Source: Kudoa neothunni (lineage: Eukaryota > Animalia > Cnidaria). Taken from it: a stretch of DNA of 64,000 bases. The stretch covers positions 16,331,731-16,395,730 of the forward strand of contig OZ199838.1 in the NCBI GenBank assembly GCA_964304625.1, written 5' to 3'. The notes beneath the pieces were generated by a model, which had not been told where the DNA came from, made no database searches, and saw nothing but the letters and a program-made list of their open reading frames with translations. Both the position numbers and the translations under genes were made by a program. The first letter of the stretch is position 1; the number at the start of each line of letters is the position of its first letter. Of the stretch, positions 3,266 through 28,600 are shown one piece after another.

Positions 3266-5412
3266 ATGTTGATCTTATTGATTTATACTTGTTTATTTGA
3301 AAATTTCCAGAATATTTTCAATGAACAACCTACAAAAACAACAGTAAAATATATTATTCTGATAACTTGAAAATTCTATATTTTAAAAGGAATTATTGGT
3401 TTATTCAAACAACAACAAATTGGTTTTCAGACCATATTTATGTAATCCTGCAAAAACTAAAATATTTATGTTGGAATGTAACGAACAGATAGAATATATT
3501 TGCTCAAGTATCGGATTATACAATATCAGTTAATTGGAACAATATTTTAGGCATTTTCAACCGGGAAGTTTCAAGATTAGAGTATGAAAACAACTGTTTG
3601 TTAGAATATATTATAGCACAACGTCCAATCCCAGGACATATTATCATCGTAATGGCTGATAAAACCTTAGAAATAAGGTAATAATACTTTTTTTTTAGTT
3701 TTTATATATTTTTAAAGAATGCAAAATGAATATTATAACTGGGCTACAAGTCAATTTAGTGATCGCAGCGTTACCCTTTCGGGATTAACATTCCATATAC
3801 ATTATTCTCATTTGACGTCATCTGAAAAAACATTCTTTCATTATTTGAAATCAAACGAGGTGGTTTCCAGATTTGAAACGGTAACTCAAATGCCTGAAAT
3901 TGAATATTACTTTTCAAAATTAACTTTTAGGAAAAAAATAAATTCGTAACATTAAGAGTAATTTTTAATAATATTTATATATTCACTAATATTGATCACA
4001 ACAATTTATTATAATAAAATATAAAATATGTGTATGATATTTTAGTTTAGTTTAGAAAAATAATTATTTTTCATAGTGGTATAAAACCAATGTTTATATG
4101 ACAATTAATGAATATGTCACTTCGTTTGGATATGTGTCGAATAACGATCCCCATAACAAAGATATTAAAATCTATAGAGTCAATTCAGAGGATCATCCAT
4201 TCTATTCAAAATATATAAAATTAGGTTACAACGATATAGTTCCTATTCTAATATACAAAAATATACTGGTAAAAAATTGTTATTAATTTACAAATCATTA
4301 TCACATTATTTATTAGACAGGAGATTATAGATCCCATGTTGATAATCCAAATGTTATTTATATAGATTCACCATGCACCTTAAAAAATGCAACTATAACT
4401 ATTGATAATCGAAATTATATTATTTGGTTAAGAAACAAAAATTTAAATAATAAGTTGTTTCTTGGACCCATAAATATCGTTGCCAAATATAATTTTTTGA
4501 AATGTTTGACCACAATTAATGAAAACATATTGACCCCGAATGTAGACCATCCTTGGAATGATCAAACTAAGCTACTTATTGAGAGTGTGTTCCCAATGAG
4601 GAATGGAGACAATTATATTGATGTAAACGAAATGTCAAAAACTTTTAAATTTTTATATAATTTTTTTAGATGTATAATTATAAGGCAGAATTTAAAAATA
4701 TTCGTTATACGAGTTCAATGGAATCGATACAAGAGATGGCAAATAAATCTAATTATTTCAATAATATGGGCCAACAAATCTCTTCGTTATCACAAAATGA
4801 AGCAAGTGATTACTTCTACGAAACAGTCTCCAGAATGTATTACTACGCTATTTTTTCGTTTTTTACTGCTGTAGAAACTATTCAAATGCATAAATACGTC
4901 TTTTTGTTCCATGTTTGTAGTTTGTATGAAGACAAATTATATTTTTTACATTAGGAATCTAACCCAGATTGGAAAGCTGAATTTATTAGTTATCAAACAA
5001 TGTTAAGATTATTTGAAGGTAAATATAGCTATTTTTAATAGATTAGATAAAATAACATTAAAAAGGAACTGAACCGCTATCAAAACCTATGGAGAATAGT
5101 GAGGAAACAAACGGAAACGCTAATGCTGATGATGATGATGATAATGAATTAAGTGAATCTCAGTTAAACAATGACGATGAAATCGAGTCTCAAAAAATTA
5201 ACGATGGCGCTATTGGTTCATCAACAATTGAAGATGATAAAGAATTTTCTCAAAATGATGAGAATGAAAAAGATAAAACAAAATCTACCAACCAAAAAAT
5301 GGGATCAAAGTCTTCATTAGTTGCCAAGATTGTTATTCCAATTGTGATAATTTTGGTTTGCTTGACTATTGGAATAGCATTCTTTATGGTGAAAAAAAGA
5401 AATAAAAACTAA
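3266..5412 (+). CDS. Orphan type-I membrane glycoprotein, paralog A (multi-exon, long acidic stalk)
   Basis: Hand-spliced: MLILLIYTCLF signal-like start; family motifs ENNCL, DKTLE, YS..T.SE.TF, HPW, FP..NG, RMYYYA, W..EF; acidic stalk; TM IVIPIVIILVCLTIGIAFFMV followed by KKRNKN*. Intron positions are shared with paralogs B-D. Confidence 0.85.
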
Positions 5413-5626
5413 ATGTGGACTTACATCATCCCACAATGCTTCTTCAACTAATAACTAATATATACATTTCGAATTTACTAATCGACTCTTTGAGTACTAT
5501 TGTAGTTGTTGTGTTAGTTCCAGTGCATATATTTTTATTTTCAAAATAATATGTAATTTTCACTTGAATATCGAAACTTGTAAGCATAACGAATCTATAA
5601 AAAATTATATATGTAAACTTTTTTAA

Positions 5627-5886
5627 CACATTATAATTACGATCTGGGTCTGATGGACCCAGAGCATGTTTGTTGCTTATATTATGGTCCTCTCAATAGA
5701 GTCAGAAAGTCATAACTTAGTCTAACTTCCTGAATATTAATTGTAGTAATCCTCCAATCAACAGTGGATGGACCCCGCGCTAGCGCAATACATTATTGGG
5801 TGGAAATCCTCAAGACTACTGCGACTATCAGTGTTATCGTTATCGCTACTACTGCAATTATAATATAACTATTATAAATTGAGTTC

Positions 5887-5917
<31 letters not shown>

Positions 5918-8900
5918 ATAAACACTGATAGTTTCTTCGCGCAAATACAACATTAACGTTGTATTTTTATTCAAATTTATATGACCTAATGACCACTGTG
6001 AGGTTTTTTATTTAATCGGAAAAAATTACACCCTTTTATGTAAAAAAAGGGTCCAATAGACCCAATATAATAGCATGACAATTGACGCCAAAAAAAAATA
6101 ACAACCAATAAAACCACAAAATACATTTAATAAAAAATTAAAAATCCAGATCCGACATTAACAAAATAAACTATCTCCAAATTATTGCATTTTTGTTTGT
6201 TTTTTGAGACATGTTTAAAAATTATAAGTTATTACATAATTTTTAAAATTTTTAATTATAATATAATTTTTTATAAATAAAATTATAGTTTTCTACTTTA
6301 AAATATCTAGGAATAGTTATTATTAAGGATAGTAATAAATTAATCTGTTGTCGCCCTCTTTCTTGTAGCTGTTTATCTGTGTGGAATGTTAACCTTTGAT
6401 GAGTCAATAAAAATGATTATTGAGTACTCAGAAGATTCTAACGTGGATGAGAATCTTTCTTTTGATGAAGAAATAGATAACATTATAGAAGAACCAGTTT
6501 CAAACGATTTGGAGAATATTTCTTAGATTGAACAATCTTAAGAGGAAACTTAGTTCTCATGAGACAAATTTATTAAATGGGAGTCGAAAATACCAACTAA
6601 AGTAGTTAGAACAATGTAACCACAATATTCTTCCAAATTATAAATCTAGAATCCCAAATGAAATTAGGGAACGAATATTTTCTCCATTGACTTCATTTAA
6701 AAGTTTTATTGGAGATGATATTATTTCAAAAATAATAATTTTGACAAGAATTTTTCGGAAATTAGTAACAATAAAATAAAAATTAACGATTCTGATGTTT
6801 GGTAATGGATAGGTGCTAATTTATAGGGTTTCCCGATCAAAGTGAGAATTGTTGCAATTAATGAGACATCTTAATTAACTCGGATATAACTTTCGCATAA
6901 AAACTAATCAACAATATAATAGAAACAAAAATATATTTAAATTTGTTTAGAATAAAATATATTATTGATTTATTATTCGCTGTTTTCGGCCTTTAAGAGA
7001 TATATTAGCATTTTCTGAAGAAACCTTCACAACGAGAAACTCTAATAAATTTCTTCAGATTTATTAGAGATTAATCCCTTCAACCGCACTCCATTTTTAT
7101 CATCACATCTTATCATCAAATTTTTCCAGACAGAAAATATGTTTTCTATTGGAGTCAGAAATGGAGAGTATGACGGCAAGATGAATAGTTTGAGTTCTGG
7201 CATGTCTACAGTGTCTTTTAGGTTTTTTACAATGATGAATACACGCATTTTCCAGAACAAAGATTGGATCGTTGATTTTTTTTAATGTACAAAACTCCTT
7301 TAATTTAATAATACAAATTTTAAAATCCTCTCCGTTCACCGCCTTATCCTGAATATTATAAAATATCATTAAATATTTATTAATGGCTGCCCCTATTGAA
7401 GTGTTTCTGTTTCTTGCAGCCGAAACAGAAAAATTTGGAGAAGTCCCTCGAGCAGCTCGCCCTCTTCTTGGTCACATAACAACAACAAATCCAACTTCAT
7501 CCCTAAAGATAAATGCTTTATTTTCCACATCAGGTTCGAATTTTTATACAATCCATTTCGTAGATGTAACTCGTTTCAATTGTAGATACATAATTTCTTC
7601 GTCCAGGAGTGGGCACAGTATATTGTATGATGTAATGAAGATTTTGAAGTATTCTATCAACTGTGCTTTTACTCACAGATATATTTAAATGATCCTGAGT
7701 CATTCTTTTCGTGTCATTTAGCCTCAATAAACATATAGAATCAATCTAAAATAAAATTCTAGGTTTTTGATCATGGGACAATTTTGATGTTTTATCGCCA
7801 TCACGGTTCTGGATACATATGAAATCCGTCTTGTTATAATTGTTTACGATTCTCCAAACAGACTAATAATTAATGGAAAAACCTTTAGATATTTGTTTCA
7901 TAAATTTTTCTTCAATGGTTTGTTAGTAATTTTAATTCTATCTTCGTCAGGGATAGAGGAATTCAATTTTTTATTTTGGATATTTCTGAGTTTCGTTCCA
8001 TCCAAATATCAAGATTTTCCAACAAAATAAATATAAATAATATATTATTAAATAAGCTCATTATAATTAAATTTTTAATATGGTTATTTATTTGTGAATC
8101 CGAAAACATTCAAATATTACTTGATCAGGAAATATCACGCATTAAAATTAAGGAACCCCCTTTTTAGGATGTATCGCGGAGCATAAGGAGTGAAGCTAAT
8201 GTTGTTACCTTTAGTTAATCAATAAATGAAATAAAAATATTATCTGTTATGTCAAATTTAATCCAAAACAATCTTTTCTTGTTTTCAATATTTTCAGTTT
8301 GATCGGGGAATCCTATATATCTTGGAAACATGAACAACAAAAACTCTTCATTACAAGAGTTACGAAATAAAGAAAAAGGTTTACCGTTTTTATCGAAGAG
8401 TAACAAATCTTCAGTGAAATTAAAATATAAATAGGTGGAAATAACATTTATATATTTTTTTAGTAATATCATATCCAAGATTTAGAATTATCTCTGAAAA
8501 TATTCGTTTTAACGACCGCGTAGAATGTGACCCTCAGAGAAAAGAGTCACCAGTTAGTTTTGTATGGGATTCATTTATCAATAATTGCCGAAATAACTAC
8601 ATATCATCTGTGCAATTAACAGTGAATGAATAGCTTTACACTACAAGGGTCGTGTGAATTTCAAAACTTATATACCGAGTATACTAGGAAAATATTTCAT
8701 CAAGATTTGGGTCTTGGCAGATGCAAAAAATGTTTATTTTTGTAATATCTAAATTAATACTAGAAGATCATCAAATGATCCCGAGGCAATTCAGAGAAAA
8801 CGAGTTGTCAGAGAACTCGCAAACCTTTATCTAGATTCTAGAATCAAGATAAAGGAAGAACTATAACTACTGGAAATTTATTAAAAAGTTTAAACCTAGA

Positions 8901-9260
8901 AAAATATTTATGAGGTTGTAATGTACACCTAATTGGAATTGTGAAAAAGTCACGTAAATTTTTATCTACATGCATTCAACAAGATAAAAAAGAAATTGAA
9001 TCTCAGTTTCTTTTCCATAATATAATCACACTTGTTAAGTTTTGTGAAAAGTCAAACAATTCTGTTTTGCTTCTCAGTTCTCTACACAACGAAAATAACA
9101 TTGAGGAAGATGGGAAGCCCGAGATAGCACCTTTATATAACCAAACTAAAGCTGGAGTAGATGTTCTTGATCAACTTATTCGATTCTACACTGTGAGAAA
9201 AAGAACTCTTAGATGACCATTTACAATATTCTATAATATTATTAACATTGTTAGTTATAA
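5627..9260 (+). mobile_element. Decayed piggyBac transposon interrupted by a Tc1 element
   Basis: TTAA+CAC left end near 5623 and GGGTC-n5-GACCC subterminal palindromes (~5646, ~6048). Broken ORF reads SPLTSFKSFIGDDII, IRFND, LTVNE, YKGRVNFKTYIPS..GKY.IKIWVLAD and KPEIAPLYNQTKAGVDVLDQ..RKRTLR*P. Right end not found. Confidence 0.9.
6824..8315 (-). mobile_element. Tc1/mariner (IS630-Tc1) element with inactivated transposase
   Basis: Imperfect TIRs TAGGGTTTCCCGATCAAAGTGA / rc TAGGATTCCCCGATCAAACTGA with flanking TA. Minus-strand fragments KDEVGF, FVLENACIHH and LPSYSPFLTPIE match the DDE and YSPDLNPIE-type motifs. Confidence 0.9.
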
Positions 9261-9585: not shown

Positions 9586-9638
<53 letters not shown>

Positions 9639-10495: not shown

Positions 10496-12503
10496 ATGTT
10501 TATTCATTGGGTGTATCTGTCTCTTTTCTTTATTCCTTATTTGAATGTCAGAACAGTAAACATAAATGTACGATGAGCTGATATGACTTAACTATAAGTT
10601 TCGTATTATGTAGCAAGTGTTGATGTATACGGATATGGATCTTCTTAATGCTATACATTATTCTTGTCACGTTGAAATCTCCAGTACTTTTGGAGTAGAA
10701 TGTGAAAATTTATATCGTGAAAGTTGCTCAAGTATAATATCTTCTGATTCATTATTCTAAAATATTTCACAAGTTCCCAGCGATGCCGATCATAACCACG
10801 TCAACATTGAAAATGATTGCTTAGAGATCTTAAGTAAAAATGCCGATCTTACCAACGCTAACGCTATCGTGGCAGTACCAGATAAAAACTTAGAACAAAG
10901 GTAACAGTTTATAATTTTATGAATTAATAAATTTTTTCTTACCCATATAGGCTTCATAATAGTTATTACGACGTTTGGTCGGAATTTGAAAACAAAAAAC
11001 GTAGCGTGACGATCGATAATAAATTAATAAATATATCTTATAATAAATATACTACATCCGAACAAACCTTTTATAATTACCTATTTTCAACTAGAGAAAC
11101 AATTCACACTTACATAGTAAATAAAATAATTTAATTTTTTCAATTCATAACATTTGGGCTCATTCAGGAAAAGGGATACAAATACGACACGAAGGTATTT
11201 GAGTTATTTAATATATATTAATAAAACATTTAAATAAATTTTTATTCATTATATAAGTGTATAAAAAATATTATATTATATTTTATTATAATATAATATA
11301 ATTTAGGGTTACAAAGATTTCGGATACATATCTTTGAGTGATGATGTGTTTTCGTTCGGATATCTCACAGATATAAACTCGGAAAATAAAGATATGGTTA
11401 CTTACACTGACAATTCACGAATATATCCATTTTATTTTAAATATATAACATCAATGGGCAAATATCAGATCCTTCCTGAATTAATATTTAAGCTAATTTT
11501 GGTAATTTTAGATTTATGAATGTTTAAAAATTAAGTTGGTATTGGGCTAGGATAATAAACATTCAATTAATCAAGATACTGGGAGCATTCATTTAAACTT
11601 TTCCTGTTCATTAATAAATATAACTGAAACCATTTTCACAGATGAACACTCTAGTTGGTTCTCTAATGTAAAGGGTGACAATAACAAATTTTTTGAACCA
11701 CTAACCATCCACGCAGCCTACAATTTTTTCTCATGCTTGAAATTAATAAATGAAGTTGTATTGATTTCAAATCAATCTCATCCATGGAATAATGTAACGG
11801 TGCAACTTATTTCAAGCAAATTCCCAAAAAAGGCTGGAATCAGATACTTTCATGTACACAAAATATAACAATAATAAATACAGTGGTTGAATTTAAATAA
11901 TATTTAAAATATAGGTTTTTGATTTTTTCTCAGTTGTAATAAACAACGATAATTATTATTCGTTGGAATACTTAAAACAATTAAACGATGAATTAATAAA
12001 GGTACCTGAAATTTGGGGAATATTCTTAGAAGTACTATAATTACAACCAACTTTTATTGAGTACCTAATTAGTCTGCAATACATCCAATTTTTTATTACG
12101 CTCTTCTTTCCTATGTTAACGAAAAAATATTGACAGAAGATAATCGTAAACTCTATAAATTCCATGTATGAAACATATTTCTAATTTTGAAATAATATAT
12201 TCATATATAGTTTTATTATTCGGATTGGCAAACGCAATTTATCAGCAACCTTACAAAATTACAACTCATTGAACGTGATTTTTGTGCAAAAATATTTCCA
12301 TGATTGATTATTCATTAGAAAATTTTGACTTCAATGAAAAAAATGAGATAGTCTATGAGTGTGCACAGAGCGAGTCATATAAATCAAAGACAGTTATGGC
12401 GGTCGTTACTGTTATTCCGCTTATAATAATAATAATCACGATTTCAATTGGCACTTATTACTACATGTCTGAAAGAAAGAAAAGACGTTTCCAAACTGCA
12501 TAA
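10496..12503 (+). CDS. Orphan type-I membrane glycoprotein, paralog B
   Basis: MFIHWVYLSLFF signal-like start; FGVEC, ENDCLE, VAVPDKNLE, HPW, FPKKAGIRYF, FYYA, WQTQF; TM VMAVVTVIPLIIIIITISIGTYYYM followed by RKKRRFQTA*. Same exon structure as A, C and D. Confidence 0.85.
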
Positions 12504-13720: not shown

Positions 13721-15872
13721 CAGCTCAGCTTTATAAAAATAAAGAATTTAACGAAGCAACGCTTCGCTAAAGATTTTCTTATTTTTATAAATAAATCAAC
13801 TTAGAAATTCTTTCCTATTTTTCAATATATGCTGTTTTGTATAAAATTGTCAGTTTTATGGTTTTCTATTTAAATTAATAACTAACTTTACAAATCGTTT
13901 TATTATTCATGTTATCTTTGTTTGAATCAATGATCAAATAAAATACTTCTCAAAAATGTCCAAAATCTCAAATTATCTTTATTCTATATTTACAAAATAA
14001 TAACGATATTTTAAGTTATATTCCATATTAAATTTCAGAATATATCGGATTCAAAGATAATTAAGTTTTCAATTAAAATGTAAATAAAATTAATATTTGC
14101 TTTTTACGTAATATTATTGGTGTGCAAGAGAATGGACATAAATTAAATTATCTCCATAAAATATTTTAATAATTATTAGAAGGAAATAAACGCTTCTAAT
14201 TATGTCCAAATATATTTAATTATAATATTTAATGCGAGACAATTATTAAATAAGTTATAAATATACTTTAAGCGGTCAAATTTGAAAATTATCGTCAATA
14301 AAGTTGGAAAAATAACTATAAGATTTATTAACAAATAAACAGATGAAAATAACTAATTTACGCATACAAAGAACATCTATTAATTATAATTAATACTTTT
14401 GATAAATAATTTCATAAAATGTCTAAAATCTAGTCTATGTATTTATTAAAATTTAATACAATGGATAATTATAATCATAAAATGAAGTTATTTATCATAA
14501 ATAATTAAATTTTAGAAGAAAACGTAATTCTAGGTATTTAATTCGTATTTGTTTGTTATTAGTATCGAAATAACGTAGTAATATTATTATTACTTTTTAT
14601 TTTGTATGTCTCAATAGTTATCGAATGAGGCGATTTTGAAATATTTTCATTATTATATTGTTGATTAAATGTATTTAGAATATTTTTAAGAAATTCTGCC
14701 CTTTTTACTAAATTCATATATTCGACTTCTTAATTATTAATCTCAAAACTTTTGGTTATAAAAACTGTTAAAATTTTTTCTACCATTGTCGAACAAAAAT
14801 TCGAATTTAATAATATATATATATATATATATATTTGTCAGAATGTTAAATATCACCAAATAATTTGGAATCTGATAATTATTTAAGTATAATACTCAAA
14901 TATATTCGAATTGGATAAAGAGGCTTAACAAAAAATTTTTAATAATTAGAAACGATATAATTTTGAACGATAAAGACATAAAAAATATGTAACTAATATA
15001 AGGATTGATTTTATGGGTTTTGGAAAGGGGAAATTTTTCTACTTGCCATTATTTGAATAAAAAAATCGATACTACTCGGTATCGCGTAACTTTTATATTA
15101 ATAAATTATTTCATTAATTTTTAATTTAATTCCCCATAGAATAATATCGTACATAAATAAAATATGTCTCCTTAGTGCAGAGAATAACTTAAACTTAAAC
15201 TACTTCAAATGTGTGATTGAACAAGGCTCCACATTTTTTAAGTTCTACGTATAAATATATTTTAATATTCTATTTTTTGAGTTAAGATTAAAAAATTGTG
15301 AAACTCCAATCCAACACAATTCGTCATCTGTGATTTTTCACTAATTTATTATATTTTAGTTCAAAGAATTAATCACTTTTTCCCAAGAATAACTACTCCC
15401 AACTCTTGGGAGTCAGAGCAACCCCAATTGGGAGAACTAGTGTAAATCGGCTAATACCTCTAAATATTAATAAATGTTGTTAAATATATGCATGAATAAA
15501 TAATACACAACCTTAAAGCTACGTTGATTATGTTGGAAAATGAAATCGTGTAATTTTAATTATTAACCATTTTCTCATTTATTGAATTCATTAATAACTT
15601 CAATTTCTGATATATTTAATATTAATATTGAAAAATATTATTGCAGTGAATAAACGTATGATAGAAAGAGATTAATTTGGTTATTTAATACTAGCTGAAT
15701 TAAATTATTCGGGTGGGGCAAATAAACATAGGGCTGATTAGATCAAACTAGTTTAAGTTTACTGTATATTTGGTTAAATAGTGAGTTAGTACCGACCCAT
15801 CAAATTTTATAAATAATTTAATTTAGATAATTATATTTTTATATAAATATGGGGAAATATTTTTCAAACCGA

Positions 15873-17854
15873 ATGATTGATTATTGGATATATTTGGCCT
15901 TATTTTCCTATCAAAATAACTGGTTGGAAGGAACAGAAATTGAAAAAGTATGCGCATTAACTGAGTTGATAATATAAATCAATTATATCTCTACATAGAG
16001 AATACTATTATACGTAGAAGATGGAGGATTTGAAGTGTTAGCGTTTAATTGTAGACCACAATCTAATCACTTCTTCGGTGTGGAATGTAATAATGAAAAA
16101 CCCTATAGATGTCCTGGTATCAATTTAAACATATTATGACTTTAATCTTATTTTAGATCCCACAAATTTACAAAACACTAGTGTTATCTTTGAAAATGAC
16201 TGTTTAGAGCTTTATAGTAGCACAAAAAATCTCGCCAACCTTAGTGTTACCGTGGCAGTACCTGACAAATCACTGGAAGCCAGGCAATTGTCAATTATAT
16301 TAATCATAGATTTCAAGTTTTGTGTTTTTAGCATGCAAATCAAACAATACGATAATTGGCCCGAATTCGAAAACCAAATTCGTCACCTAAATTTTGATAA
16401 TAAATATCTGGAAATATCATATTCTAAACTTACTGCATCCGCGAAAACATTTTATCATTATGTGGCTGCAAACGAAGAAACAATCACCAGATTCACGGTA
16501 TACATGATATATAAATTAATATAATTAACTTGGGTTTATTTTTGTAGGAGACGGGGCCTTCACACGAAATACTGGTAATAATATTTATAAAATCTTCATT
16601 TTATGCATAAAAATATAGATTTTAATTTATATGGCGTTAATATCACCTCTTAATCAACAATTTTTTCAATTAGAGATACAGTGACTTTGGTTATATATCC
16701 TTGAGCAGTCATCTATTCTCCATTGGATATCTTACAGAAAGTACTCAAGAAAATAATGGTGTAATTACTTATATGGTAAAATCAAAAAAATATCCATTTT
16801 ATTGTAAATATATGCCATTCATGGGATACTACAATATTCTACAAAAAATAGTCTACAAACAAATAACAGTAATTAAATTTTGCGAGAAATTTTTATATAT
16901 TTTGATGTCGATTAGCTAGGAAATTTTGATTATAATTCGGAGAATGATGAAGTTTCATTGAGTTTCGCTTGTTCAATAATGAACATTTCTATAACTGTAT
17001 TCACTGAGGAATACAAGATTTGGTTTTCATATATGGAAGGTGACCTTAGTAAATTCTTCAAACCGCTCAAAATTGTCGAAGCTTATAATTTCACTGCTTG
17101 TGTGGAATTAATAAACCAAGCGGTATTGACTTTAAACAAAACCCATCCTTGGAAAAGTGTAACAATGGAATTGATTTCAAGCGAATTCCCAAAGAAAAAC
17201 GGAACCAGATATTTTTATGTACCGAAAATAAACATTAATAACTATTTTATTTAAGTATTGAAAAATAATTTATATATTTAGGTATATAGTAGTGTTCGCA
17301 ACTTTGTAGAGATGGATACCTTCTACTCTTTCCAGACCATTCAGTCGTTAATAAACCATACAAATTATAAATCAGCATTAGGAATAAAAGCATGTTTGAT
17401 TGTCCACGTTGTTTTTATATGTTACTTTAGGATGTTGTGAACCGAATGTATTATTATGCTCTTATCAACTACATTAATAAGAATACACTGACGGATTACA
17501 ACTATAAACTATATAAATTCCGTGTATGTGAATGTTGTTAAATATTAACGTCTAAAAGATAAATCTAGTCACACGTTTCCTTCTGGGAGTCAGAATTTAT
17601 AAGTGACATCATAAGCTTAAAACTTATAAAAGGTACTTTATATATTTTTGTTTATTCGATTTAATCATGAATTATAAATGATCTATAATCATGAAGAAAA
17701 TAAAATAGATGGCGATAACTCAGAGTTGACTCTTGAAGGCAAGAAAAAAAATTCAAAGAGTTTTTTAGGACTCGTGGTGGTTGTTCCAGTTATGTTATTG
17801 TTGATTCTAATATCCACTGGAACATTTTTCTATATATTGGTAGTCAAGAGATAA
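15873..17854 (+). CDS. Orphan type-I membrane glycoprotein, paralog C (two candidate GC-AG introns)
   Basis: MIDYWIYLALF start with TATATAAA ~30 nt upstream; FFGVEC, ENDCLE, VAVPDKSLE, HPW, FPKKNGTRYF, RMYYYA, WESEF; TM LGLVVVVPVMLLLILISTGTFFYILVV followed by KR*. Confidence 0.85.
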
Positions 17855-17971
17855 GCTTATTTCAATAAATATAATAAACAATATAAAATGCGACCAATGA
17901 ATTTTATTTTATAATTTCTCATAATTTTTCCTATTATCTTTCATCTATATACGTATATATGTGTATATATA

Positions 17972-19076
17972 CAGTGGATGAGGGGTGGATCGTAATTTCA
18001 AACAATCTTTTACTATTTACTTGGTAAAATATTTTAATTTGTGCAATTTTAATTAAAACTTTTGGCATATCTATTAAGTAATAATTGAGAGAACTAAAAA
18101 ACAGTTCATAATTATAGGAGAAAAAAACGTCTACACCGGAGTAATCTACTTTTTAAATAAACGGTAATTAATGTTTGTATAATATACATACATTAATACG
18201 TTCAAATATAGTACAAATTTATATAAAAACTTTAGTTAATCATTCAGTTTCTATATAAGGAAAATGTATTAATAAATAACCTATAAATATATTTGTTTTA
18301 GGTATTGTATTGGTATATATGCTACATTGTATATGTTGTACGGTGATGGGTGCCACTTTTACCCAGGAATATAATTAAATAGTTCTTCCGGTTTTTGGAT
18401 AATCGAACATTTATTTGCACATAATGTCAATTAAATCCAAATAAAATTTAGAGTTTCTTCTGGTTAGCAAGATTTCCGGATAATCAAGATTCGACTGTAT
18501 AATGTTGAATTATTATAAAATTTATTACTCAGATATAGTAATATTTTTGTGTCTTCTAACAATTATATTGTATACTTCTTGATCAATATCCGTTTGATTA
18601 TTATAACTATTTCGAATAATGTCTTATATCAGACAAATGAGAGAGGCAATTTAGAATTGAATAATTTTTCGTGCATTATAGTCATATTTATGAAACTTGT
18701 CATCTTTGTGACAGTTACCATCACTTAAAAAATCACTAAAATTGGCGTCGTTTTCAATATTGTTTCCGCCCCATATCTTCGCTAGTATTTGAATAACTTT
18801 ATTATTTCATCTTTCTTTTTAAATGTCCTATCTCAATTTTTATTTCTGTCTCCCACTTCGCCATCAATCTAAAACGAAAATCTCAACAACTATTAAAATA
18901 TATGAACTACGCGTCATTACAAAATAATCCATAAAAAAAAACATAATCAATTAAATTAAAAATACTTTATTTATATTCTTAACGGTCAAATAAATGTTTT
19001 TAAATAACTTATTATAATCTTATATGTGTGTTTATTTTGTAACATTTTCTCAAATTACGAACCCACTTCTTTACTG
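17972..19076. mobile_element. Degenerate TA-flanked TIR element related to 36241-37473
   Basis: Ends CAGTGGATGAGGGGTGGATCGTAATTT ... AAATTACGAACCCACTTCTTTACTG form imperfect inverted repeats resembling those of 36241-37473. Confidence 0.55.
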
Positions 19077-20316
19077 TTTACAATAGCGCTGGGTTATTAT
19101 GCACTCGAACTTCTCTCCTAACAAGTGTGTAGTATCTCTGCACAACTGTATATGTATATATACGTATATAAAATATGAAGTGCACTTTATATATTCTCTC
19201 GTGTTCATCTATTCTCGCTATTCAAAAATCATATCTCAATTTCGGCGCGAAACACGAATTAAATCTATTCTAGTTATAAATTATTATATCAAACTAGTAA
19301 CGAACCTATTTTTTAGATTTCGTATATCGTATAGGAAGGTAAATTTTTTGAGATATTTCGAAATAATCGCACTGGAAATTTTATATTGTTAATTAATAAA
19401 TCCTTAAAAACGGTAAAATTTAAGTTATGTTACCGACATTAATAAAATTTTATTATTTAAAGTTTTTCTCGTTTTCAACGTAATCAAGGCAAAATATGGT
19501 GTAAATATTATTACAACAAGTATTTTTTTAATAGGTAAAATTGTAAGAAATATTCACAATGAATTAATTTACAAATATTCAATAAAATATTTATATGGAC
19601 TCTATAATAAAAAGTATATTATTCATATGGATAATGAGGTTATATTTAATATTTGTCTCGATTTACTTAAGAAATCCCACACTTAAAGGAACAGATACTC
19701 CCATCTCTTGGGAGTGAAAGCACTCCCAGTCCTAAGGTGTTGTTCCAAAACGACTTATGGTTATATTGTTGGGTATTTTTAAAGTTTCATAATTTTTCAG
19801 TAAATATAAGTAAAATAATAGATTAATTTGTTCGATAGATTTTCATAATAACGCTTTTATTATCGTTTAGTAGATTGTATTAAACTGATTTATATTGAAT
19901 ATTATAGATTTTAAATATTATATAGATGATCGAATAATAAAAGTATTAAATATCAAATATTTATTATATTATGTTTTAATAAATTGTCTTCAGTTGATTT
20001 ATATTGAATAATATATACGTTTAATAATATTTTAATGATTGTGTAATAAAAACTTTAAAACTGAAATTATTATTATCTCGTTAATAAAAAAGTGAAAGAA
20101 ATTAGATATATTTTGTTAATGCAGAACGATTTTATTATTATGTATTATTAATTATTTAGGTGTATTTAAAAAATTAATACGAATAAGATTAAAATATTTT
20201 GATTAGTTATTACGAGGCTATTAGTTTCTCATCCTACTTTCTAGACAGTATATAAATTACATCTGATGTGTATCTTTAAAACTTAAAAGTTAACTAGTAA
20301 ATATTGTTTCCATAGA

Positions 20317-22287
20317 ATGATTGTTCATTGGATATTATCAATTTTGCTTGTATATTATCCTAATTCACATGAAGGACAACAAGCTACCAAAGTTTTAATA
20401 ATAATTAATTAGATTAGATAACTCAATTTTATCTATAGGAGATATTACTAAGTGTGATAGCTGGTGAACTAAGTGCTGAATTATATTCGTGTGAAGAAAA
20501 TAGTATTAAATTTTTTGGTGTTCACTGTCACAGAGAAGATTTATACAAATGTCCTAGTATTCTATTATCTGATTGTTATGTGCTCTATAATATTGTAATA
20601 AGAGTTGGAAAGTCAGGAAAACACTAAAATAGCTTTCGAAAATAATTGTCTCGAGAATGTTATGCAAAGTACCAATCTCGCAAGAGCCAACGTGCATGTG
20701 GTAGTACATAAGGGACCATATTATTCTGTGTAATGGATTATATTTTAACATGGAAGAAAAAATAAATCTTTAATTTCTTTACCGAGCAGTTATCAGGAAG
20801 GCGAGCAAAACATAGAAACCAAACCTCGTAACTTGTCGATTGCTGATGCAAATTTGATAATATCTTATTCTCAAATCACTGCATCGGAAATAACTTTTTA
20901 TAGCTATTTGGTGTCAAACGAAGAAAGAATTCAAATTTTTACAGTAAAATATCGACTGAATTTTATAAAATACTATTATTGATATATTTAGGAAGGTGGG
21001 TTCAGTGAAGATATATTGGTAATTCGACCACATATCAATGAAACAATAATTTCTCATTTTACTAAAATAAATATTGATTTATTTTATTATTATCATCTTT
21101 AAAATAAATATTAAAAATAATATAAATTAGGGATATGACGACTACGGATACATATCCTTGAGTGAACGAATGTTTTCTATTGGATATTATGCAAATGCCA
21201 AAAATAACAATACCGCTGCTTGCGGTTCAGATTCAAACAAATATAAATTTTATTCGAAAGAATTACTATATATGGGATATAATGAGATCTTTCCTAAATT
21301 AATATTTAAGCAAATATTGGTAATTGGAGAGACAATCATCTATGATAATATTTTATTTTTAATAGCTTGAAAATTTTGAGTATGACGAGTCGAACAAGGA
21401 GGTTTCATTAAAATTTCCTTGTTATACCGAAAATAAAATTATTACTGTTTTTACGGAAAAATATAAAGCTTGGTTTTCAAACATTTCTGGAGACATTGAC
21501 AGATTTTTCAAACCAATCAATATTATAGAAGCCTATAATTTTGTTTCTTGCTTCAATTTAACATACCAAACAGTATTAATTTATAATGAAAGTCATCCTT
21601 GGAAAGAAGTCACACAGGAATTTATTTCGATTGAATTTCCAAAGAAAAATGGAACCAGATACTTCCGTGTAACAACATAGTCATATTATTAAATCATGAT
21701 AATTATATAATTTTAGGTTTATGGAAATTTTCCTACGTTGATTGAAAACAATGCTTACGCGTTATTCGAAAAAATACAAACATTACTGAATGAGACAAAC
21801 TCTAGGTCGTTACTTATGGAAGTATATCTAGTGGACTTAAAAAAAATAATATATAAACTAGGATATATTATACAAAATGTATTATTATGCTCTTCTTTCC
21901 CATATCAATACAAAAATTTTTACTGACGATAATAAAATACTCTACAAATTTCACGTAAAAACCATCCATATATTAATAATAAAATTTTTTTTAGTCATAT
22001 CATATCGGTTGGAAACCGGAGTTTCTTAGTAATCTAACGAGGTCTGAATTTATTGGAGGTAAATTTTAAAGTCGATGTTTACACATGATGTTGGAAATCA
22101 ATTATAATATATAAATCTAGGCATAAATACTAATAATGGTAATGATACTGGCGTTTCCCAAAGTAAGGAGGCAAAATCCGATTCCATCATTACTATTGTG
22201 ATACCCATAATATTGCTTATAATTGCAGTGGTTGTTGGAGTGGGCTTCTTTATATTAGTCAAGAATCAGAGGAAAGCTACAAGCTAA
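20317..22287 (+). CDS. Orphan type-I membrane glycoprotein, paralog D
   Basis: MIVHWILSILLVY start; FFGVHC, ENNCLE, HPW, FPKKNGTRYF, KMYYYA, WKPEF; TM IITIVIPIILLIIAVVVGVGFFILV followed by KNQRKATS*. Same intron positions as A-C. Confidence 0.85.
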
Positions 22288-23149: not shown

Positions 23150-23550
23150 AAAATAATCAAATCTTTAAATGTTTTTAGAATCTAAAAATAGAAATTATTT
23201 TCATGCAGGACAATTTCATTCTGTTGATGAAGATGTATATAAGTGAATTGGGTGGATACGAAGAAAAAAGATTGTAGTTAACGTCGTAACGGTAAACACC
23301 ACGAGAAATTAATTAGCAAAAGAAAAAGATTTACCTACATGTACAATTTTAAAATTCTTGAAGGGATTCTTTAGTTTAAAAAAGGTCCAACATTAAAAAA
23401 TCAAATTTTATTAACTAATCTGTTGATACTGCGTCTGAAACTACTTCAGAGTTGATCAATCAAATCAGAACATTTTTTAAAAGTCACTCTGAAAATTTTA
23501 TTTACGATGTAGACGAATTCGCCTTATTCTTTATTCTACCAATAGCAACA
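23150..23550 (+). pseudogene. pogo/Tigger transposase remnant
   Basis: Fragments GQFHSVDEDVYK*I.WIRRK (CENP-B-type HTH-like) and NFIYDVDEFALFFILP (resembles IYNADETGLF) with stops. Confidence 0.55.
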
Positions 23551-24254
23551 AGGGAAATATTTCATAGATTGTTGAAAAGTATTTTTGTGTTTTTAACATG
23601 TTTATCGAGCTTAATTAATTTTATAAATTAATATATAATTAACTGGTCTTTTTAAACTCAACTTAATCATTAAATATTAAATGTCAATTTATTCTGAAAT
23701 AATTTCGCACGCACATTCGTGAAATTGGACGTGATAGATTTCTCGCAGTTTTTTTCTTGGTCCCGTGGAGATTCCGTGAAGTTGGTTCCTTATTGTAACA
23801 CCAAGACAACATTTCTCTTATATAAACAAATAAATAAACAACTTTGTAACGAATATTATGGATTTTTAAACGTTAATTTTACGCGATTTTATTATCTGAT
23901 TTGATTTGACTTGATTAATGTTTTGCCCATGCATGATTATCATATGTAAATGTGAATGAGGTAAGATCTAATACATTCTTTAAAAAAAAAAGAACGTCAT
24001 AAATTTTCGAAAAAACTGGTACACGCGATTCAATTTGCAACAAAAACAATCTACAATTAACTAAATAGTAGAAAACATATGAGCACGCGATACTAATACA
24101 TAAAGTAGGTTCGACGCAATAAGAACCATATCCTTACTTTCCATTACGATCGTTGCGTTTACAAAAATCTCATTTATTACTATATCTGAAAAGGGACAAA
24201 ATCTATGTAATTTGTACAATTTTTAGATATCCCAAGATTTTAAACTATAATTAT

Positions 24255-25375
24255 ATACAATATAAATATATTCAAAGGAGGACTGTCGGTATGTTTGTGT
24301 CAGTACGTGTGCCCCTATGTATGTATGCGCGAATAATTTTTTCCCTATAGAGATACAGAGTCGTATCTAAAATTTTTATAAATTTGTGATATTTAAAAAA
24401 ATTGTTTAATTGTTTTTGGACTACTAAAGTTTCCAAAAAATATTTATGAAATAGTGATTTTGTCGATTTAAAGTTGTTTATCGGATTACATGAGTTCAAC
24501 TATAGATTTAGCGTTTGCTTATGTCATTGAGATAATAGGTTGAAGTTAACTATCTACCTTATACACTCTATCATATGTTAATTGAACGATGTCATCTATC
24601 TTTACGTATAAGGTTTGTGCGTTTATTTTATTGTTTGCTTAAATAAATTCCTTACATGGGGAGTTTTAATGTAATTGACTTGACAAACACATTTTGAAGA
24701 CTCTATTAGTGGATTTATATACGAAAAAATGTTAATATTTGAATTATTCTTGAGTTGGTTATGCGTGTTATAATCAGATAGATTGAAGCACTATAACGCA
24801 AGTACCGTGTTCGTAGATTTCATTGAAACCGTCCGTTATGTTGAACTTACAGTGATTCAATTCAGTGCAGATGGTTAGTTCATCCGTTTATTTATATTAT
24901 TTGTTAGAAAATGTGTATTAAAGTTTTTGAGGACCAAAGGATATTAATTTTAGTAATATCAATTAATTTTCATACGTTTTCTTCTATTTCTATTACTTTC
25001 TCCATTTTTTTATCTCAAAAAGTTGGTGGTACACACAATTATTGAGCGGGACAAGAATTTGACTTTTAGAAATCCCCTGGGCCAAAAAATAACGTTTTAG
25101 ATAACACTTTAATGGGATTTAAATAATTCGGGGATGAAAAAAATACGATGCTGACCTTGGCTCATTTAGCGTTGGTGCCGAGCCACGAAATTTTAAATGA
25201 ACGCCAAAACATAATTTAAATTTCATAATCCAAATCGTTAAAGTATATTGCTTAAAAATTTTTAGTCATTTTGCATCTGTGGGTTAATTTTAGGATTTAA
25301 TATATTTTTCGAATATTGTGAAGTAACGTATCTATGCGAAATCTTCCCCAAGCAACGCTGGGCAGTTCCCGCTAG
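24255..25375 (+). mobile_element. Non-autonomous Helitron-like element
   Basis: 3' terminus is hairpin CCCAAGCAACGCTGGG, ~9 nt, CTAG, then T. 5' region has the TATA..GTGTG-rich tract shared with the 35440 copy. Start coordinate approximate. Confidence 0.7.
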
Positions 25376-25703
25376 TTAATTGATAAAATAAAATCAATAA
25401 TAAAAAGTAGGAAATAATAAGTTACGATAACTCTTCCATGGTAGAATTATTATTATTATTAATATTAAAAATAATATTTACAAAAGCCTAAGAAAAGAAT
25501 GTTACATTGATACTTACTAGAAATTATGATTTTTTTAATTTCTTGTTATTTTAATCATAATTTGGGATTGTAATATTCCGTAATAAATTTTAAGAAAATT
25601 ATCTCCGTAAATTGATTTTATTTATCACAAAAAATTTAATGTAACCTGAAATATTATAGATAGAATTAATTTTTATTAGTTTGATTATATTCAAATTTAT
25701 AAC

Positions 25704-27660
25704 TAGGGTTGGCGATTTTCGACGTTTATCTTTTTACAAGTCGATGATTTTAATCGATCGAAATAAATAAAAATTTAAAATTAAAGTTTTTTAGTGAAAA
25801 ACAAATTAAATCGACTAAAATAGTGACTAATAAGTAATATTGTAGTTGAGATTTACTGTGAGGGACCATTAAAATTTAACACTGATAACATTGTGAGGCG
25901 TTTATCTGAAAGATTAATCCTTTCTTTGCCAAATACATGCCTTAATTTTGAAAAGCTCCTTTCGATGTTGATGGATGATGACACAGGAATAACCAATAAA
26001 TCCTCAGAAATTTGTGATAAAATTTGTAATATGTTTGATTTATTTCTCTAAAAATCATTGTTGATGGGTAGGTCTGATTCTTTCAAAATTTTGCAGAGGA
26101 GATCATATTCTTATTGAATTTCAGACTTTTCATTGATCTCTAATAAATAAGACCAGAAATCTCAACATTTTAGGTTGTAATTTTATTTTTTGGATCAATT
26201 TCTTTAATCGTTTGGAAAAATGTAGTCGATGGCAAACAATCGTTAACATCATTTGGTAATGACTGATGAATCTCATAAAATTTAGAACAGAAACTTTCAG
26301 TTTTAATCGTTAATTGGCTCCTAGATTCAAATGGAATAAGTCCAAGAATATCTTTGTAAACTATTATTAAATGTTGGGGCGTTAATACCAGTCATCTTTT
26401 ATCCAATCAGCAATACTTGAAATGCAGCAGTTATCTTCAGTTTCGATGAATCTAGAGAATTCAAACAATGGCGTTAGTTCATCTGTTAGAATATTAAATT
26501 AACAATAAAATATATTGTAACTAACTGAATAAATTTCAATTATTGAGTTTAATTTTTTTCCTGTTTCATCATTTTTATTTTCTTTAAAATCATTGACTGC
26601 AGGATAATATTCTTTTATGTGTTTTAGACAGTTAATGAACCTATACCATCATATGTCCAAAACACGAGGAATTTCCTTCGTTATTTTGAAGCTATTATTA
26701 AGGTGAACCCAAAAATTCCTTGTATAATTCCTACCTTTCGATAAAATGGTGGAAAAACTTTTAATATCAAAAAAGTATTCATTCGTAACTTTTTGAACTG
26801 TCAAATGAATAATGCGTGAATAATATGTAATTCCGATGATAGTTGGATATATGGTTCTTAAATCCTTAGAATACTTTTTCATGTATTGTGTTGAGTCAGA
26901 AACATTCACAATGCATTTATCCCATTTTAAGTTGTGCCGATTTAGTGATTTAGAACACTGGGTATGTGATCAGCTATGGTTACGAATTTGCATCGAACAA
27001 GCCTCGAAGAATCGAGCAGTATAGTTCTCCATTTACCGGTAGCACAATCATGAAAAGAAGCTAATGTATTAAAAATCGGCCTTTTTTCGAATCAGGGGAC
27101 TCATCAATTATTAAACTAAATCGTACATCCCTCATCACTGATTTAATGTTATCGACACCTTGAAATACAACCGAAAGATGTTTACCAACTGTTTACCAAT
27201 CAATATTTTCCCATCTGGCAAGGATCTCGACGCTTAGCAGTACATAGAATGTAACCCCCTCAAGTTACTCTTTTTATTAATTTCATCAAATGTAAGACTG
27301 TCAAAAATTATAATCTTCACCAAATCCATTTCAATATCATTCGATTTTGATCTATCGAGATTTAGAATATTCTTAAGGGTATTGTTTTGGAAACATTTGA
27401 CTGTATTGACAAATATTTCTTTTAACTGATATTTTCTTGAATTTTATTTTGTTTAAGTGGCAACAGAACCTTGCAATATTAACAAGACAAGGAATCGCCA
27501 ACAGCATCTAAATCAAGCCACTCCACTAAATAATTAGTAATATCATATCGCTTCCCACCCATCTTAGTTCGATTTTAAGGTGCCAAAATCGATTTTTACC
27601 AATCAAAAAAATGTCGAACGATTTTATAAAATTAGAAGGTTTTAATCGATTAAAACCTTA
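25704..27660 (-). mobile_element. Decayed hAT transposon
   Basis: TAGGG.. left end and ..ACCTTA right end, flanked by 8-mers TTTATAAC / GATATAAC (degraded TSD). Minus strand reads LLVIPVSSSINIERSFSKLRHV, the hAT C-terminal dimerisation motif; many stops. Confidence 0.85.
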
Positions 27661-28600
27661 GATATAACTTATCTTGTGTTTGTGGGGGAATACGAATATT
27701 GGTATATATGTATACATAGATATAGGGTGCCGCTGACAGATTTTTCAGAATTATCACATTCGTAGTAGGTTATTAATTTGTTGTTTGTTCGAATCTCATC
27801 AACAAAGTGAAAATTGGCTCATGATAAAACAATTTTAATAATAATAATAAATAATAATAATATTAATATTAAAAGGCAAAGATTTATTTTTAGTGATTTT
27901 TCTATTAAAATTGAGATCTGATACATACGTGTGCCAAATATTCGTTTAATCTAATCATGATAAATTAATTATATTGGTTTATTTTGGATAGTTCAGGATT
28001 AGTTAATTTAATTGTTTATATTTTATTTTTAAATATTGAGACACTTCTATGTAGAAATAATTTTAGTATTATAATTTTATATTCGGTCAAATAAAAACCT
28101 ACTGAATTATTGCATTAGAACGTAATGAATTGAATGTGTTACTATGCTTTTCATCGTTATGGTTATTGATATAACATTATACAAATGTTCAAACAAAATC
28201 TAAAAATTTCACGTCGAAATTATTAAGTAAAATTATTAAAGATCATAGTTTTTAGTCATATCTTTTCGATCCGGATTAGATGATAATTGGTAATCTAATC
28301 AGTGCTAAGTTTTAGGGGGACAAATATCGTGTTGTTTTTTGTATTTGTAATAAGAAATCAAGTAGAAATTGAAAATCATAGAAAAATCACGCATAATAAT
28401 ATTGATTCAGAAAATCGTCAGATAATAAGAGGAACGGAAATTTAACGAATGATTCAACAATCATGATTGTTGTTCTCGTCGTTTCAATTATAGTTTTAAT
28501 ATTCATTGGATTGGTTCTATACGTATTGGTGAAGGAGAAGAAGATAAATTTATGTTCAAAAAATAAATCAAAAGGAAGAACTTCCAAGAATGTCTTCTAA
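27661..28600 (+). pseudogene. Fifth, inactivated paralog of the orphan membrane-protein family (3' half; degraded 5' part probably left of the hAT, ~25480-25703)
   Basis: DRFFRIITFVVGY*FVVCSNLINK matches D DRFFKPINIIEAYNFVSCFNL; IFSDFSIKIEI*YIR matches ISSEFPKKNGTRYF; N*MCYYA matches RMYYYA. Intact-looking TM exon IMIVVLVVSIIVLIFIGLVLYVLVKEKK..NVF*. Confidence 0.8.

What the first reader, a model, noticed from the sequence alone, without database searches (positions are those of the whole stretch)
3266..28600. Tandem array of an orphan, fast-diverging type-I surface glycoprotein family (4 genes + 1 pseudogene)
Seen: four co-oriented genes ~4.5-7 kb apart share 11-exon architecture, signal peptide, spaced cysteines (C..FG.xC..C, ENxCL, F.C, YNF..C), short motifs (HPW, FPKxxG.RYF, MYYYA, W..EF), many NxS/T sites, one C-terminal TM and a short basic tail. 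Between the motifs they are very divergent. I recognise no domain. Inference: a birth-and-death family of variant surface antigens or host-interaction receptors embedded in transposon debris; this is the best candidate here for an undescribed system.
Basis: partly seen in the sequence, partly recalled or inferred. Interest (0 to 1): 0.82.

Follow-up and report, generated by a model that had tools for sequence, protein, structure and literature searches.

The report
Dead-apyrase-like surface protein gene array
Four intact neighbouring genes and one decayed relic in the tuna-muscle parasite Kudoa neothunni belong to an undescribed family of at least 32 membrane-anchored proteins, which probably descend from an ATP-degrading enzyme (CD39/apyrase type) and have lost its catalytic loops.

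Summary
Four co-oriented genes (3266-5412, 10496-12503, 15849-17854, 20317-22287) splice into intact 474-549-aa proteins. Each has an N-terminal hydrophobic leader, six conserved cysteines, one C-terminal membrane span and a short basic tail. The "pseudogene" is only a decayed 3' relic at about 27710-28600.

The genes form the right-hand end of a roughly 200-kb, 21-gene array. The family has 32 strong and 2 weak copies in a 40.26-Mb genome that matches the published Kudoa neothunni assembly.

"Orphan" is only half right. Pfam, a profile search of 1.84 billion proteins, and PDB sequence profiles find nothing except one metagenomic fragment. However, an AlphaFold model of exon 6 matches GDA1/CD39 NTPDases and nothing else, at the ACR4 start of domain II. 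The exon 7 profile weakly but non-randomly matches the next NTPDase segment, the PC...GxGxxxxC disulfide region. No copy keeps the phosphate-binding motifs, so these are probably pseudo-enzymes.

dN/dS is 0.2-0.5 and most duplicates are old, so diversifying selection is not shown. Expression could not be tested. Other notes of this scan reached the same pseudo-NTPDase reading on neighbouring DNA.

The parts
3266..5412 (+). Gene g1. It has 10 exons (11 if 4778-4819 is spliced out) and encodes a 549-aa type I membrane protein with a long acidic stalk before the TM. It belongs to a different subfamily from g2-g4; its closest copy lies at C1:16.252 Mb.
   Evidence: Manual splice model translated without stops. 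Exon profiles for E2, E4, E6, E7 and E9 hit in order. Tree placement.
10496..12503 (+). Gene g2. It has 11 exons and encodes a 478-aa type I membrane protein.
   Evidence: Model, with all introns GT-AG. Exon profiles hit in order.
15849..17854 (+). Gene g3. It has 11 exons and encodes a 483-aa type I membrane protein. Exon 6 (16674-16868) is the piece whose model matches NTPDase domain II. Exon 7 (16916-17218) carries the conserved Cys pair and the HPW and FPKxxGxRYF motifs.
   Evidence: Model; intron 8 is GC-AG. Fold evidence. DNA contigs of run X1 cover it without differences.
20317..22287 (+). Gene g4. It has 11 exons and encodes a 474-aa type I membrane protein.
   Evidence: Model. Exon profiles hit in order.
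27710..28600 (+). Decayed 3' relic of a g4-like copy. It holds an exon 7 remnant with an in-frame stop, degraded exons 8-10, and a still-open TM-plus-basic-tail frame. No 5' exons are detectable.
   Evidence: blastn gives 59% identity over 681 nt to g4 (E 4e-29) and 65% over 85 nt. Three-frame reading. No exon-profile hit.
7042..7369 (-). Frameshifted Tc1/mariner-type transposase fragment between g1 and g2.
   Evidence: Pfam DDE_3 at E 2e-4 and 4e-4, below the family cut-off.
8941..9216 (+). piggyBac-type transposase fragment between g1 and g2.
   Evidence: Pfam DDE_Tnp_1_7 at E 8e-4, below the family cut-off.
17840..19240 (.). Dispersed repeat between g3 and g4.
   Evidence: Summed contig depth is 19-119 here against about 5 in the flanks in DNA run X1, with several alternative joints.

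Best explanation
What is shown:
- The four genes are the last intact members of a 21-gene, roughly 200-kb tandem array at C1:16.157-16.353 Mb of Kudoa neothunni.
- The family has at least 32-34 copies, about 0.6% of the 5,316 predicted genes.
- Each gene encodes a leader peptide, an ectodomain of about 400 aa, a variable stalk, one membrane span and a very short basic tail. This is a type I membrane protein.

What is inferred, at about 0.7:
- The ectodomain descends from a GDA1/CD39 nucleoside triphosphate diphosphohydrolase (apyrase).
- Exon 6 is the first beta-hairpin/beta/beta/helix unit of NTPDase domain II, where ACR4 sits.
- Exon 7 is the following segment, with the conserved 'PC ... GxGxxxxC' disulfide.

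What follows from the alignment:
- The glycine-rich phosphate-binding loops are replaced in every copy. ACR1 (DxGSxxTR) has no counterpart, and ACR4 (DLGGASxQ) is replaced by the acidic, non-glycine sequence GYIsLDeDvFSiGY.
- The proteins therefore most likely cannot hydrolyse nucleotides. They would act as non-catalytic surface modules (binding, adhesion or shielding) at the interface between parasite and host muscle fibre. This function is inferred and untested.

How the family grew:
- It expanded by old tandem duplication with occasional dispersal to other chromosomes.
- It is under relaxed purifying selection.
- There are a few recent duplications and a few relics.
For: Family and architecture:
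- The exon 7 profile finds 32 strong and 2 weak open copies in the genome.
- 29 of the 32 loci keep exons 2-3-4-6-7 in the same order and spacing, and 26 of these also have exon 9 in place.
- 30 of 32 loci have a hydrophobic-leader first exon, and 29 of 32 have a TM-plus-short-tail last exon.

Genome identity:
- The genome has three large contigs plus a remainder of exactly 18,219 bp. This equals the three chromosomes and the 18,219-bp mitochondrial contig reported for K. neothunni in PMC12239612.

NTPDase link:
1. The AlphaFold2 model of exon 6 (28-sequence alignment, pLDDT 86.5) has NTPDases as Foldseek ranks 1-47 (about 32 entries listed after collapsing). They come from Legionella, rat NTPDase1 and 2, legumes and human NTPDase4, with prob 0.99-1.00, TM 0.58-0.72, mostly about 0.70, rmsd 1.5-4.9 A (1.5-2.3 for the Legionella and rat NTPDase2 rows), E about 1e-2. 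The next hit drops to prob 0.18.
3. The exon 7 profile scores real NTPDases above shuffled ones: 24% against 2.5% reach 0 bits or more, with maxima of 10.3 against 5.8 bits. The match is always at the PC...GxGxxxxC motif that follows ACR4. The top hhalign alignment falls at the same place.
4. The exon 7 profile also hits that same exon in a divergent true NTPDase of the same genome (L033). In L033, PF01150 covers positions 235-303 on that exon, and the ACR1 and ACR4 motifs are intact.
5. In L036, a distant pseudo-copy, my NTPDase profile and the family exon 7 profile hit the same exon, and the family exon 6 profile hits the preceding exon.
6. The phase-0 intron before exon 6 lies five codons before the hairpin glycine, as in L033.

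Loss of motifs: shown by the alignment of all copies.

Selection: dN/dS is 0.16-0.53 for informative pairs, and dS is about 0.8-1.8 for most.
Against: - No sequence method reaches significance. Pfam GDA1_CD39 does not hit any exon.
- hhalign probabilities are at most 1.3%.
- The exon 2, 3, 4, 6 and 9 profiles score NTPDases no better than shuffles.
- The exon 7 model (pLDDT 79) matches nothing in PDB or the ESM Atlas.
- The N-terminal half (exons 2-4, four cysteines) has no support beyond resemblance by eye.
- The full-length spliced protein was not folded.
- Surface location, glycosylation and lack of enzyme activity are inferred only.
- No transcript evidence exists. Three RNA runs carrying the host's species label gave zero reads, which is no test.
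Confidence: 0.6

Rival explanations
1. This is a truly orphan fold. On this reading the ectodomain is a lineage-specific invention, and the exon 6 resemblance to NTPDase domain II is convergence on a common beta-meander-plus-helix arrangement, or an artefact of folding an isolated exon.
For: - No significant sequence match turned up anywhere. The 1.84-billion-protein profile search found only an 82-aa metagenomic fragment of the same family.
- The word search, PDB profiles, Pfam and Atlas features all gave nothing.
- The exon 7 model has no structural match.
Against: - Two independent aligners put only NTPDases on top, from bacteria, plants and mammals, and these cover the whole model.
- The neighbouring exon gives a collinear, above-null sequence signal at the next NTPDase motif, including the disulfide pair.
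- Intermediate copies (L034, L036) keep further NTPDase-type cysteines.
Confidence: 0.22
2. This is a variant surface antigen system. The repertoire would be expressed one or a few copies at a time and diversified to evade host immunity. This could hold whatever the fold is.
For: - The repertoire is multi-copy and tandem, the ectodomains are divergent, and the stalks vary in length.
- The array lies in the distal 4-6% of the chromosome and is flanked by another surface-protein family.
- Antigenic variation has been reported for other myxozoans, according to the preprint 10.64898/2026.02.11.705288.
Against: - dN/dS is 0.2-0.5 with saturated dS, so most copies are old and under constraint.
- Only three recent pairs exist.
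- The paralogs share no upstream element.
- K. neothunni plasmodia grow inside muscle fibres (general knowledge of the genus), where antibody pressure is limited.
- Expression data are lacking.
Confidence: 0.1
3. These are active enzymes with unconventional motifs. On this reading the proteins still hydrolyse nucleotides or another phosphate ester, using the conserved acidic residues of the altered loops.
For: - The ACR4-equivalent loop is rich in Asp and Glu in most copies (LDeDxF), which could bind a metal.
- A conserved Glu in exon 4 (SE..F..Y..SNE) may correspond to the catalytic Glu of ACR3. This rests on comparison by eye only.
Against: - Both glycine-rich phosphate-binding loops, which define the ASKHA and NTPDase active site, are absent in all 32 copies.
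- The genome keeps two genes with intact motifs that can supply the enzymatic function.
Confidence: 0.05

Closest known systems
GDA1/CD39 ecto-NTPDases (Pfam PF01150; for example rat NTPDase1 and 2, Legionella Lp1NTPDase, plant apyrases)
   Same: - The ectodomain is about 400 aa and faces outward or into a lumen.
- The exon 6 model superposes on the start of domain II (rat NTPDase2 193-258).
- Exon 7 carries the 'PC ... C' cysteine pair at NTPDase-like spacing (43 residues here; about 45 in rat NTPDase2 by my recollection, not checked).
- The order of the pieces is collinear.
- The intron before the hairpin sits at the same place as in a true NTPDase gene of the same genome.
   Different: - None of the five apyrase conserved regions is recognisable by profile.
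- Both phosphate-binding loops are replaced.
- The Pfam model does not match.
- The topology is signal peptide plus one C-terminal TM, rather than two TMs or an N-terminal anchor.
- The family is expanded to more than 30 tandem copies, against the one or two canonical genes in this genome.
Catalytically dead enzyme-derived surface families of parasites (for example inactive trans-sialidase-like proteins of Trypanosoma cruzi). This comparison rests on general knowledge.
   Same: An enzyme scaffold has lost its catalytic residues, been multiplied into a large surface repertoire, and probably been reused for binding or shielding.
   Different: The enzyme fold and the parasite lineage differ, the copy number is far smaller, and there is no evidence here for immune exposure or binding.
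Variant surface protein families claimed in the myxozoan Sphaerospora molnari (VSP-like and RIFIN/STEVOR-like; preprint 10.64898/2026.02.11.705288)
   Same: A lineage-specific, multi-copy family of single-pass membrane proteins in a myxozoan.
   Different: VSPs have more than 10% cysteine with CXXC motifs. This family has about 7 cysteines in about 480 aa and no CXXC repeats. There is no sequence relation.

Membership tests
GDA1/CD39 NTPDase (PF01150) | Five apyrase conserved regions (ACR1-5) detectable by the family profile | tested here: not met
   Pfam finds no GDA1_CD39 hit on any exon of g1 or g3, or on any of the 28 exon 6 sequences, even at E up to 10. A PF01150 search of the whole genome hits only C2:7.278 Mb and C1:0.885 Mb.
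GDA1/CD39 NTPDase (PF01150) | Glycine-rich phosphate-binding loops: DxGSxxTR (ACR1) and DLGGASxQ (ACR4) | tested here: not met
   In the alignment of all copies, exon 2 reads ElLLYv....l.v..Y.C and exon 6 reads GYIsLDeDvFSiGY. No copy keeps either motif. The true NTPDases of the same genome do keep them.
GDA1/CD39 NTPDase (PF01150) | Two-lobed ASKHA-type NTPDase fold | tested here: inconclusive
   The exon 6 model matches the start of domain II in all NTPDase structures, and they are the best matches by both aligners. The exon 7 model matches nothing. Exons 2-4 and the whole ectodomain were not folded.
GDA1/CD39 NTPDase (PF01150) | Conserved domain II disulfide (HPC ... xxC-xx-L) after ACR4 | tested here: met
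   C19 and C62 of exon 7 are invariant. Profile matches to real NTPDases fall on DPC and GxGxxxxC, above the shuffled controls. The same exon is hit in L033 and L036.
GDA1/CD39 NTPDase (PF01150) | Hydrolysis of nucleoside tri- and diphosphates | not testable with these tools
   This needs a recombinant protein assay.
Variant surface antigen system (var, VSG or VSP type) | Mutually exclusive or switching expression | not testable with these tools
   No run holds RNA of this parasite. Runs X10-X12 gave zero reads on 15840-21839.
Variant surface antigen system (var, VSG or VSP type) | Diversifying selection on the exposed domain | tested here: not met
   Nei-Gojobori dN/dS is 0.16-0.53 on the alignable exons. 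Site-wise tests and the unalignable segments were not covered.
Giardia-type VSP | More than 10% cysteine with many CXXC motifs | tested here: not met
   There are 7-8 cysteines in 474-549 aa and no CXXC repeats.

The most novel reading that the evidence does not exclude
A myxozoan has turned a dead apyrase scaffold into a repertoire of more than 30 surface proteins. These would be displayed in a stage-specific or variant manner to bind host muscle-cell components, or to mimic or block purinergic danger signalling without hydrolysing ATP. That would be a new type of host-interaction family in a metazoan parasite.
Probability: 0.15. Interest if true: 0.8.

Novelty: new variant of a known kind. 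Interest (0 to 1): 0.55.

Why it matters
Myxozoans are economically important fish parasites, and Kudoa species spoil tuna and other fish muscle. Their genomes are full of unexplained lineage-specific genes. The K. neothunni genome paper has no occurrence of 'gene famil', 'orphan' or 'surface'.

If this family, about 0.6% of the gene set, is a surface repertoire built on a dead NTPDase scaffold, it would matter in three ways:
- It gives a concrete set of candidate host-interaction or diagnostic antigens.
- It is an example of how extreme sequence drift hides a known fold from every sequence method.
- It is a case of pseudo-enzyme expansion in a parasitic cnidarian.

It also warns against calling such families "orphan" from sequence searches alone.

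Tried and rejected
Searches that found nothing or were not significant:
- Pfam on every exon type.
- PDB sequence profiles for exons 6 and 7.
- The word-index protein search with the exon 7 alignment.
- ESM Atlas feature searches for exons 6 and 7 and an Atlas shape search for exon 7. All scored below the levels that mean anything.
- Exon-by-exon hhalign against a 26-sequence NTPDase4/7 alignment. Nothing was significant and, apart from exons 7 and 8, the hits were not collinear. My by-eye pairing of exons 2, 3, 4 and 9 with ACR1, 2, 3 and 5 is therefore not claimed.
- Metagenome scans. The alignment was too variable to seed a scan, and P0001 found no relatives in JGI metagenomes.

Tests that could not be made:
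- RNA evidence. Only DNA runs hold the stretch, and the three metatranscriptomic runs with the host's label gave zero reads.
- The source of the metagenomic relative (ENA ERZ28624939 and ERZ4740346) could not be traced in the literature.

Negative analyses:
- A search for a shared upstream 8-mer among 23 paralogs returned only AT-rich words.
- No read-through frame spans exons 6 and 7, so a by-reference fold of both together was not possible.


Full report
**Organism and setting**

The window is G000:C1:16331731-16395730 of a 40,260,978-bp assembly in four contigs. Three contigs are 17,154,348, 12,040,071 and 11,048,340 bp long, which leaves exactly 18,219 bp for the fourth.

PMC12239612 describes the Kudoa neothunni genome recovered from yellowfin tuna HiFi data. 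It reports three chromosome scaffolds plus an 18,219-bp mitochondrial contig, a median intron of 49 bp, 5,316 predicted proteins and almost no usable RNA reads.

The window has about 22-37% G+C. Conserved animal genes lie to the right of the finding: uL5, an AHSA1-domain gene, a pyridine-nucleotide oxidoreductase and an ankyrin-PDZ gene.

**The observation**

I built g3 by hand, mapped its exons and phases onto g2 and g4, and built g1 by hand.

- All four models translate without stops into 549, 478, 483 and 474 aa.
- g2-g4 have 11 exons. g1 has 10, because the 42 nt at 4778-4819 is in frame and open there.
- Introns are 40-119 nt. All are GT-AG except intron 8 of g3, which is GC-AG.
- Each protein has a short hydrophobic N-terminus, six family-wide cysteines (four in exons 2-3 and two in exon 7), one C-terminal hydrophobic span and a 3-12-residue basic tail.
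- NxS/T sequons are not enriched over composition.

The fifth copy is only a relic. Exon profiles find nothing significant in 22300-29900. However, 27882-28544 aligns to the 3' part of g4 at 59% over 681 nt. A g4-like exon 7 remnant at 27710-27794 carries a stop. A TM-plus-tail frame survives near 28430-28600.

Transposase fragments lie between g1 and g2. A dispersed repeat lies between g3 and g4.

**The family**

- The exon 7 translation finds 32 places in the genome. A profile of 28 exon 7 copies (A1) finds 32 strong and 2 weak hits, all open.
- Twenty-one copies lie at C1:16.157-16.353 Mb, and 19 of these are consecutive and co-oriented. The window holds the right-hand end of this array.
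- Other copies lie at 16.528 Mb, elsewhere on C1, and on C2 and C3.
- Exon profiles show that 29 of 32 loci keep exons 2-3-4-6-7 at the same spacing, 26 of them with exon 9 as well.
- 30 of 32 loci have a hydrophobic-leader first exon, and 29 of 32 have a TM-plus-short-tail last exon.
- Median identity on the conserved exons is 31%.
- A maximum-likelihood tree puts g2, g3 and g4 with the copy at 16.317 Mb. It puts g1 with the copy at 16.252 Mb. Dispersed copies nest inside array clades.
- Nei-Gojobori dN/dS is 0.16-0.53, and dS is about 0.8-1.8 for most pairs.
- Only three recent pairs exist: 99% (dN/dS uninformative), 96% (dN/dS 0.42) and 79% (dN/dS 0.53) identity.

This is an old tandem expansion under relaxed constraint. 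Diversifying selection is not demonstrated.

**Relatives elsewhere**

- A profile search of 1.84 billion representative proteins gave one true hit. P0001 is an 82-aa exon-7-like ORF (E 4e-20), found on two short ENA metagenome contigs.
- Contig L029 carries exons 3, 4, 6 and 7 at family spacing. It is at most about 70% identical in DNA to any K. neothunni copy, so the family exists in at least one other organism.
- The word search, PDB profiles, Pfam and the Atlas gave nothing.

**What the fold says**

- Exon 7 (A1) folds to pLDDT 79 as beta-beta-beta-alpha-alpha-beta-alpha-alpha. It matches nothing in PDB or the Atlas.
- Exon 6 (A2) folds to pLDDT 86.5 as four strands and a helix.
- Foldseek ranks 1-47 for the exon 6 model are all GDA1/CD39 NTPDases (about 32 entries are listed after similar chains are collapsed). 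They come from Legionella, rat NTPDase1 and 2, legume apyrases and human NTPDase4. Prob is 0.99-1.00 and TM 0.58-0.72, mostly about 0.70. Rmsd is 1.5-2.3 A over 55-61 columns for the Legionella and rat NTPDase2 rows, and up to 4.9 A for the plant and human ones. E is about 1e-2. Probability then falls to 0.18.
- By my recollection of NTPDase numbering, which I did not check here, that range begins with ACR4 (DLGGASTQ) and ends at the FLCYG motif.

**Sequence tests of the NTPDase link**

The genome has a canonical NTPDase4/7-like gene at C2:7.278 Mb (PF01150 E 2e-33), with all the ACR motifs readable. It also has a divergent true NTPDase at C1:0.885 Mb (L033), with intact DAGSTGTR and DIGGSSLQ.

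I collected 122 NTPDases and aligned 26 of them (A3).

- hhalign exon by exon is not significant. The best case is exon 7 at P 0.04, aligned to the GxGxxxxC motif.
- Unfiltered exon profiles were run against the 122 real sequences and 1,220 shuffled ones. Exons 2, 3, 4, 6 and 9 give no signal.
- Exon 7 gives a signal. 1.6% of real sequences against 0.08% of shuffled ones reach 5 bits or more.
- After adding three distant genomic copies to the exon 7 profile, 24% against 2.5% reach 0 bits or more, with maxima of 10.3 against 5.8 bits. The match is always on 'PC ... GxG(F/W)xxC'.
- The exon 7 profile hits exactly that exon of L033, which PF01150 covers at positions 235-303.
- It also hits that exon of L036 at C1:16.79 Mb. 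There my NTPDase profile hits the same exon, and the family exon 6 profile hits the preceding one.
- Distant copies L034 and L036 keep additional cysteines where, by my recollection of rat NTPDase2, its other domain II disulfides lie.
- The phase-0 intron before exon 6 lies five codons before the hairpin glycine, as in L033.

Together these findings make descent from an NTPDase the best reading, at about 0.7. The N-terminal half remains unsupported.

**Function**

No copy keeps the two glycine-rich phosphate-binding loops, so nucleotide hydrolysis is unlikely. The conserved positions are Cys, Pro, Trp, Gly and aromatic residues, which are structural rather than catalytic.

I therefore read the family as non-catalytic, membrane-anchored ectodomains. 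The reading that they act at the parasite surface in binding, adhesion or shielding is inference. E-NTPDases of other parasites have been implicated in adhesion and infectivity (PMC8630654). This makes reuse of the scaffold plausible but proves nothing here.

**Novelty**

- The K. neothunni paper has no occurrence of 'gene famil', 'orphan' or 'surface'.
- None of the listed top papers in the literature search links myxozoans with NTPDases.
- Within this scan the same reading was reached on neighbouring and other DNA: notes s1-718103, s1-718104, s1-718105, s1-718121, s1-718122 and the followed-up s1-701620. I saw these only after my own fold result, and they are not independent evidence.

**Limits**

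- There are no transcripts.
- There is no full-length fold.
- dN/dS was measured only on the alignable exons.
- Copy counts are lower bounds.

Noticed in passing
window 29777-32760 (-): A multi-exon gene built of repeated modules of about 100-200 aa, each with several cysteines and an FN3-like appearance. It directly flanks the array. Other notes of this scan describe it as a separate large surface-protein family.
   Followed up: no
window 17390-17430 and 4778-4819: The homologous intron 8 is GC-AG (41 nt) in g3 and GT-AG in g2 and g4. In g1 it is represented by an in-frame, stop-free 42 nt beginning AT and ending AC, so it is either retained as coding sequence or spliced non-canonically.
   Followed up: partly
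window 60525-60871 (+): A tandem repeat that is open in all three frames and encodes reiterated hydrophobic units of the MLFYSYAFLFLCFFI type. It lies next to the AHSA1-domain gene at 60936-61481(-).
   Followed up: no
L033 (G000:C1:884130-887228, - strand): A divergent but apparently intact NTPDase gene with a signal peptide, ACR1 (DAGSTGTR) and ACR4 (DIGGSSLQ). It is the closest catalytically competent relative of the family that I found in this genome.
   Followed up: partly
L034 (C1:9.356 Mb), L035 (C1:0.746 Mb), L036 (C1:16.79 Mb): Very distant pseudo-copies. L034 and L036 keep extra NTPDase-type cysteines (LNCLGY, SIC, C-x5-C). The wider pseudo-NTPDase superfamily is therefore larger than the 32-34 copies counted with the exon 7 profile.
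   Followed up: partly
L002 and L003 (C1:16.292 and 16.280 Mb); L009 and L013 (C1:16.181 and 16.157 Mb): Two very recent duplications inside the array, at 99% and 96% protein identity on the conserved exons. The second pair is the only part of the array on the opposite strand.
   Followed up: partly
L029 and L030 (ENA metagenome contigs ERZ28624939 and ERZ4740346): Short contigs from two metagenome assemblies carry exons 3-7 of a family member that is at most about 70% identical in DNA to any K. neothunni copy. This is presumably another Kudoa-like parasite in those samples.
   Followed up: partly
L031 2950-3170: A run of N (withheld or masked sequence) lies just downstream of the canonical NTPDase gene on C2.
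   Followed up: no
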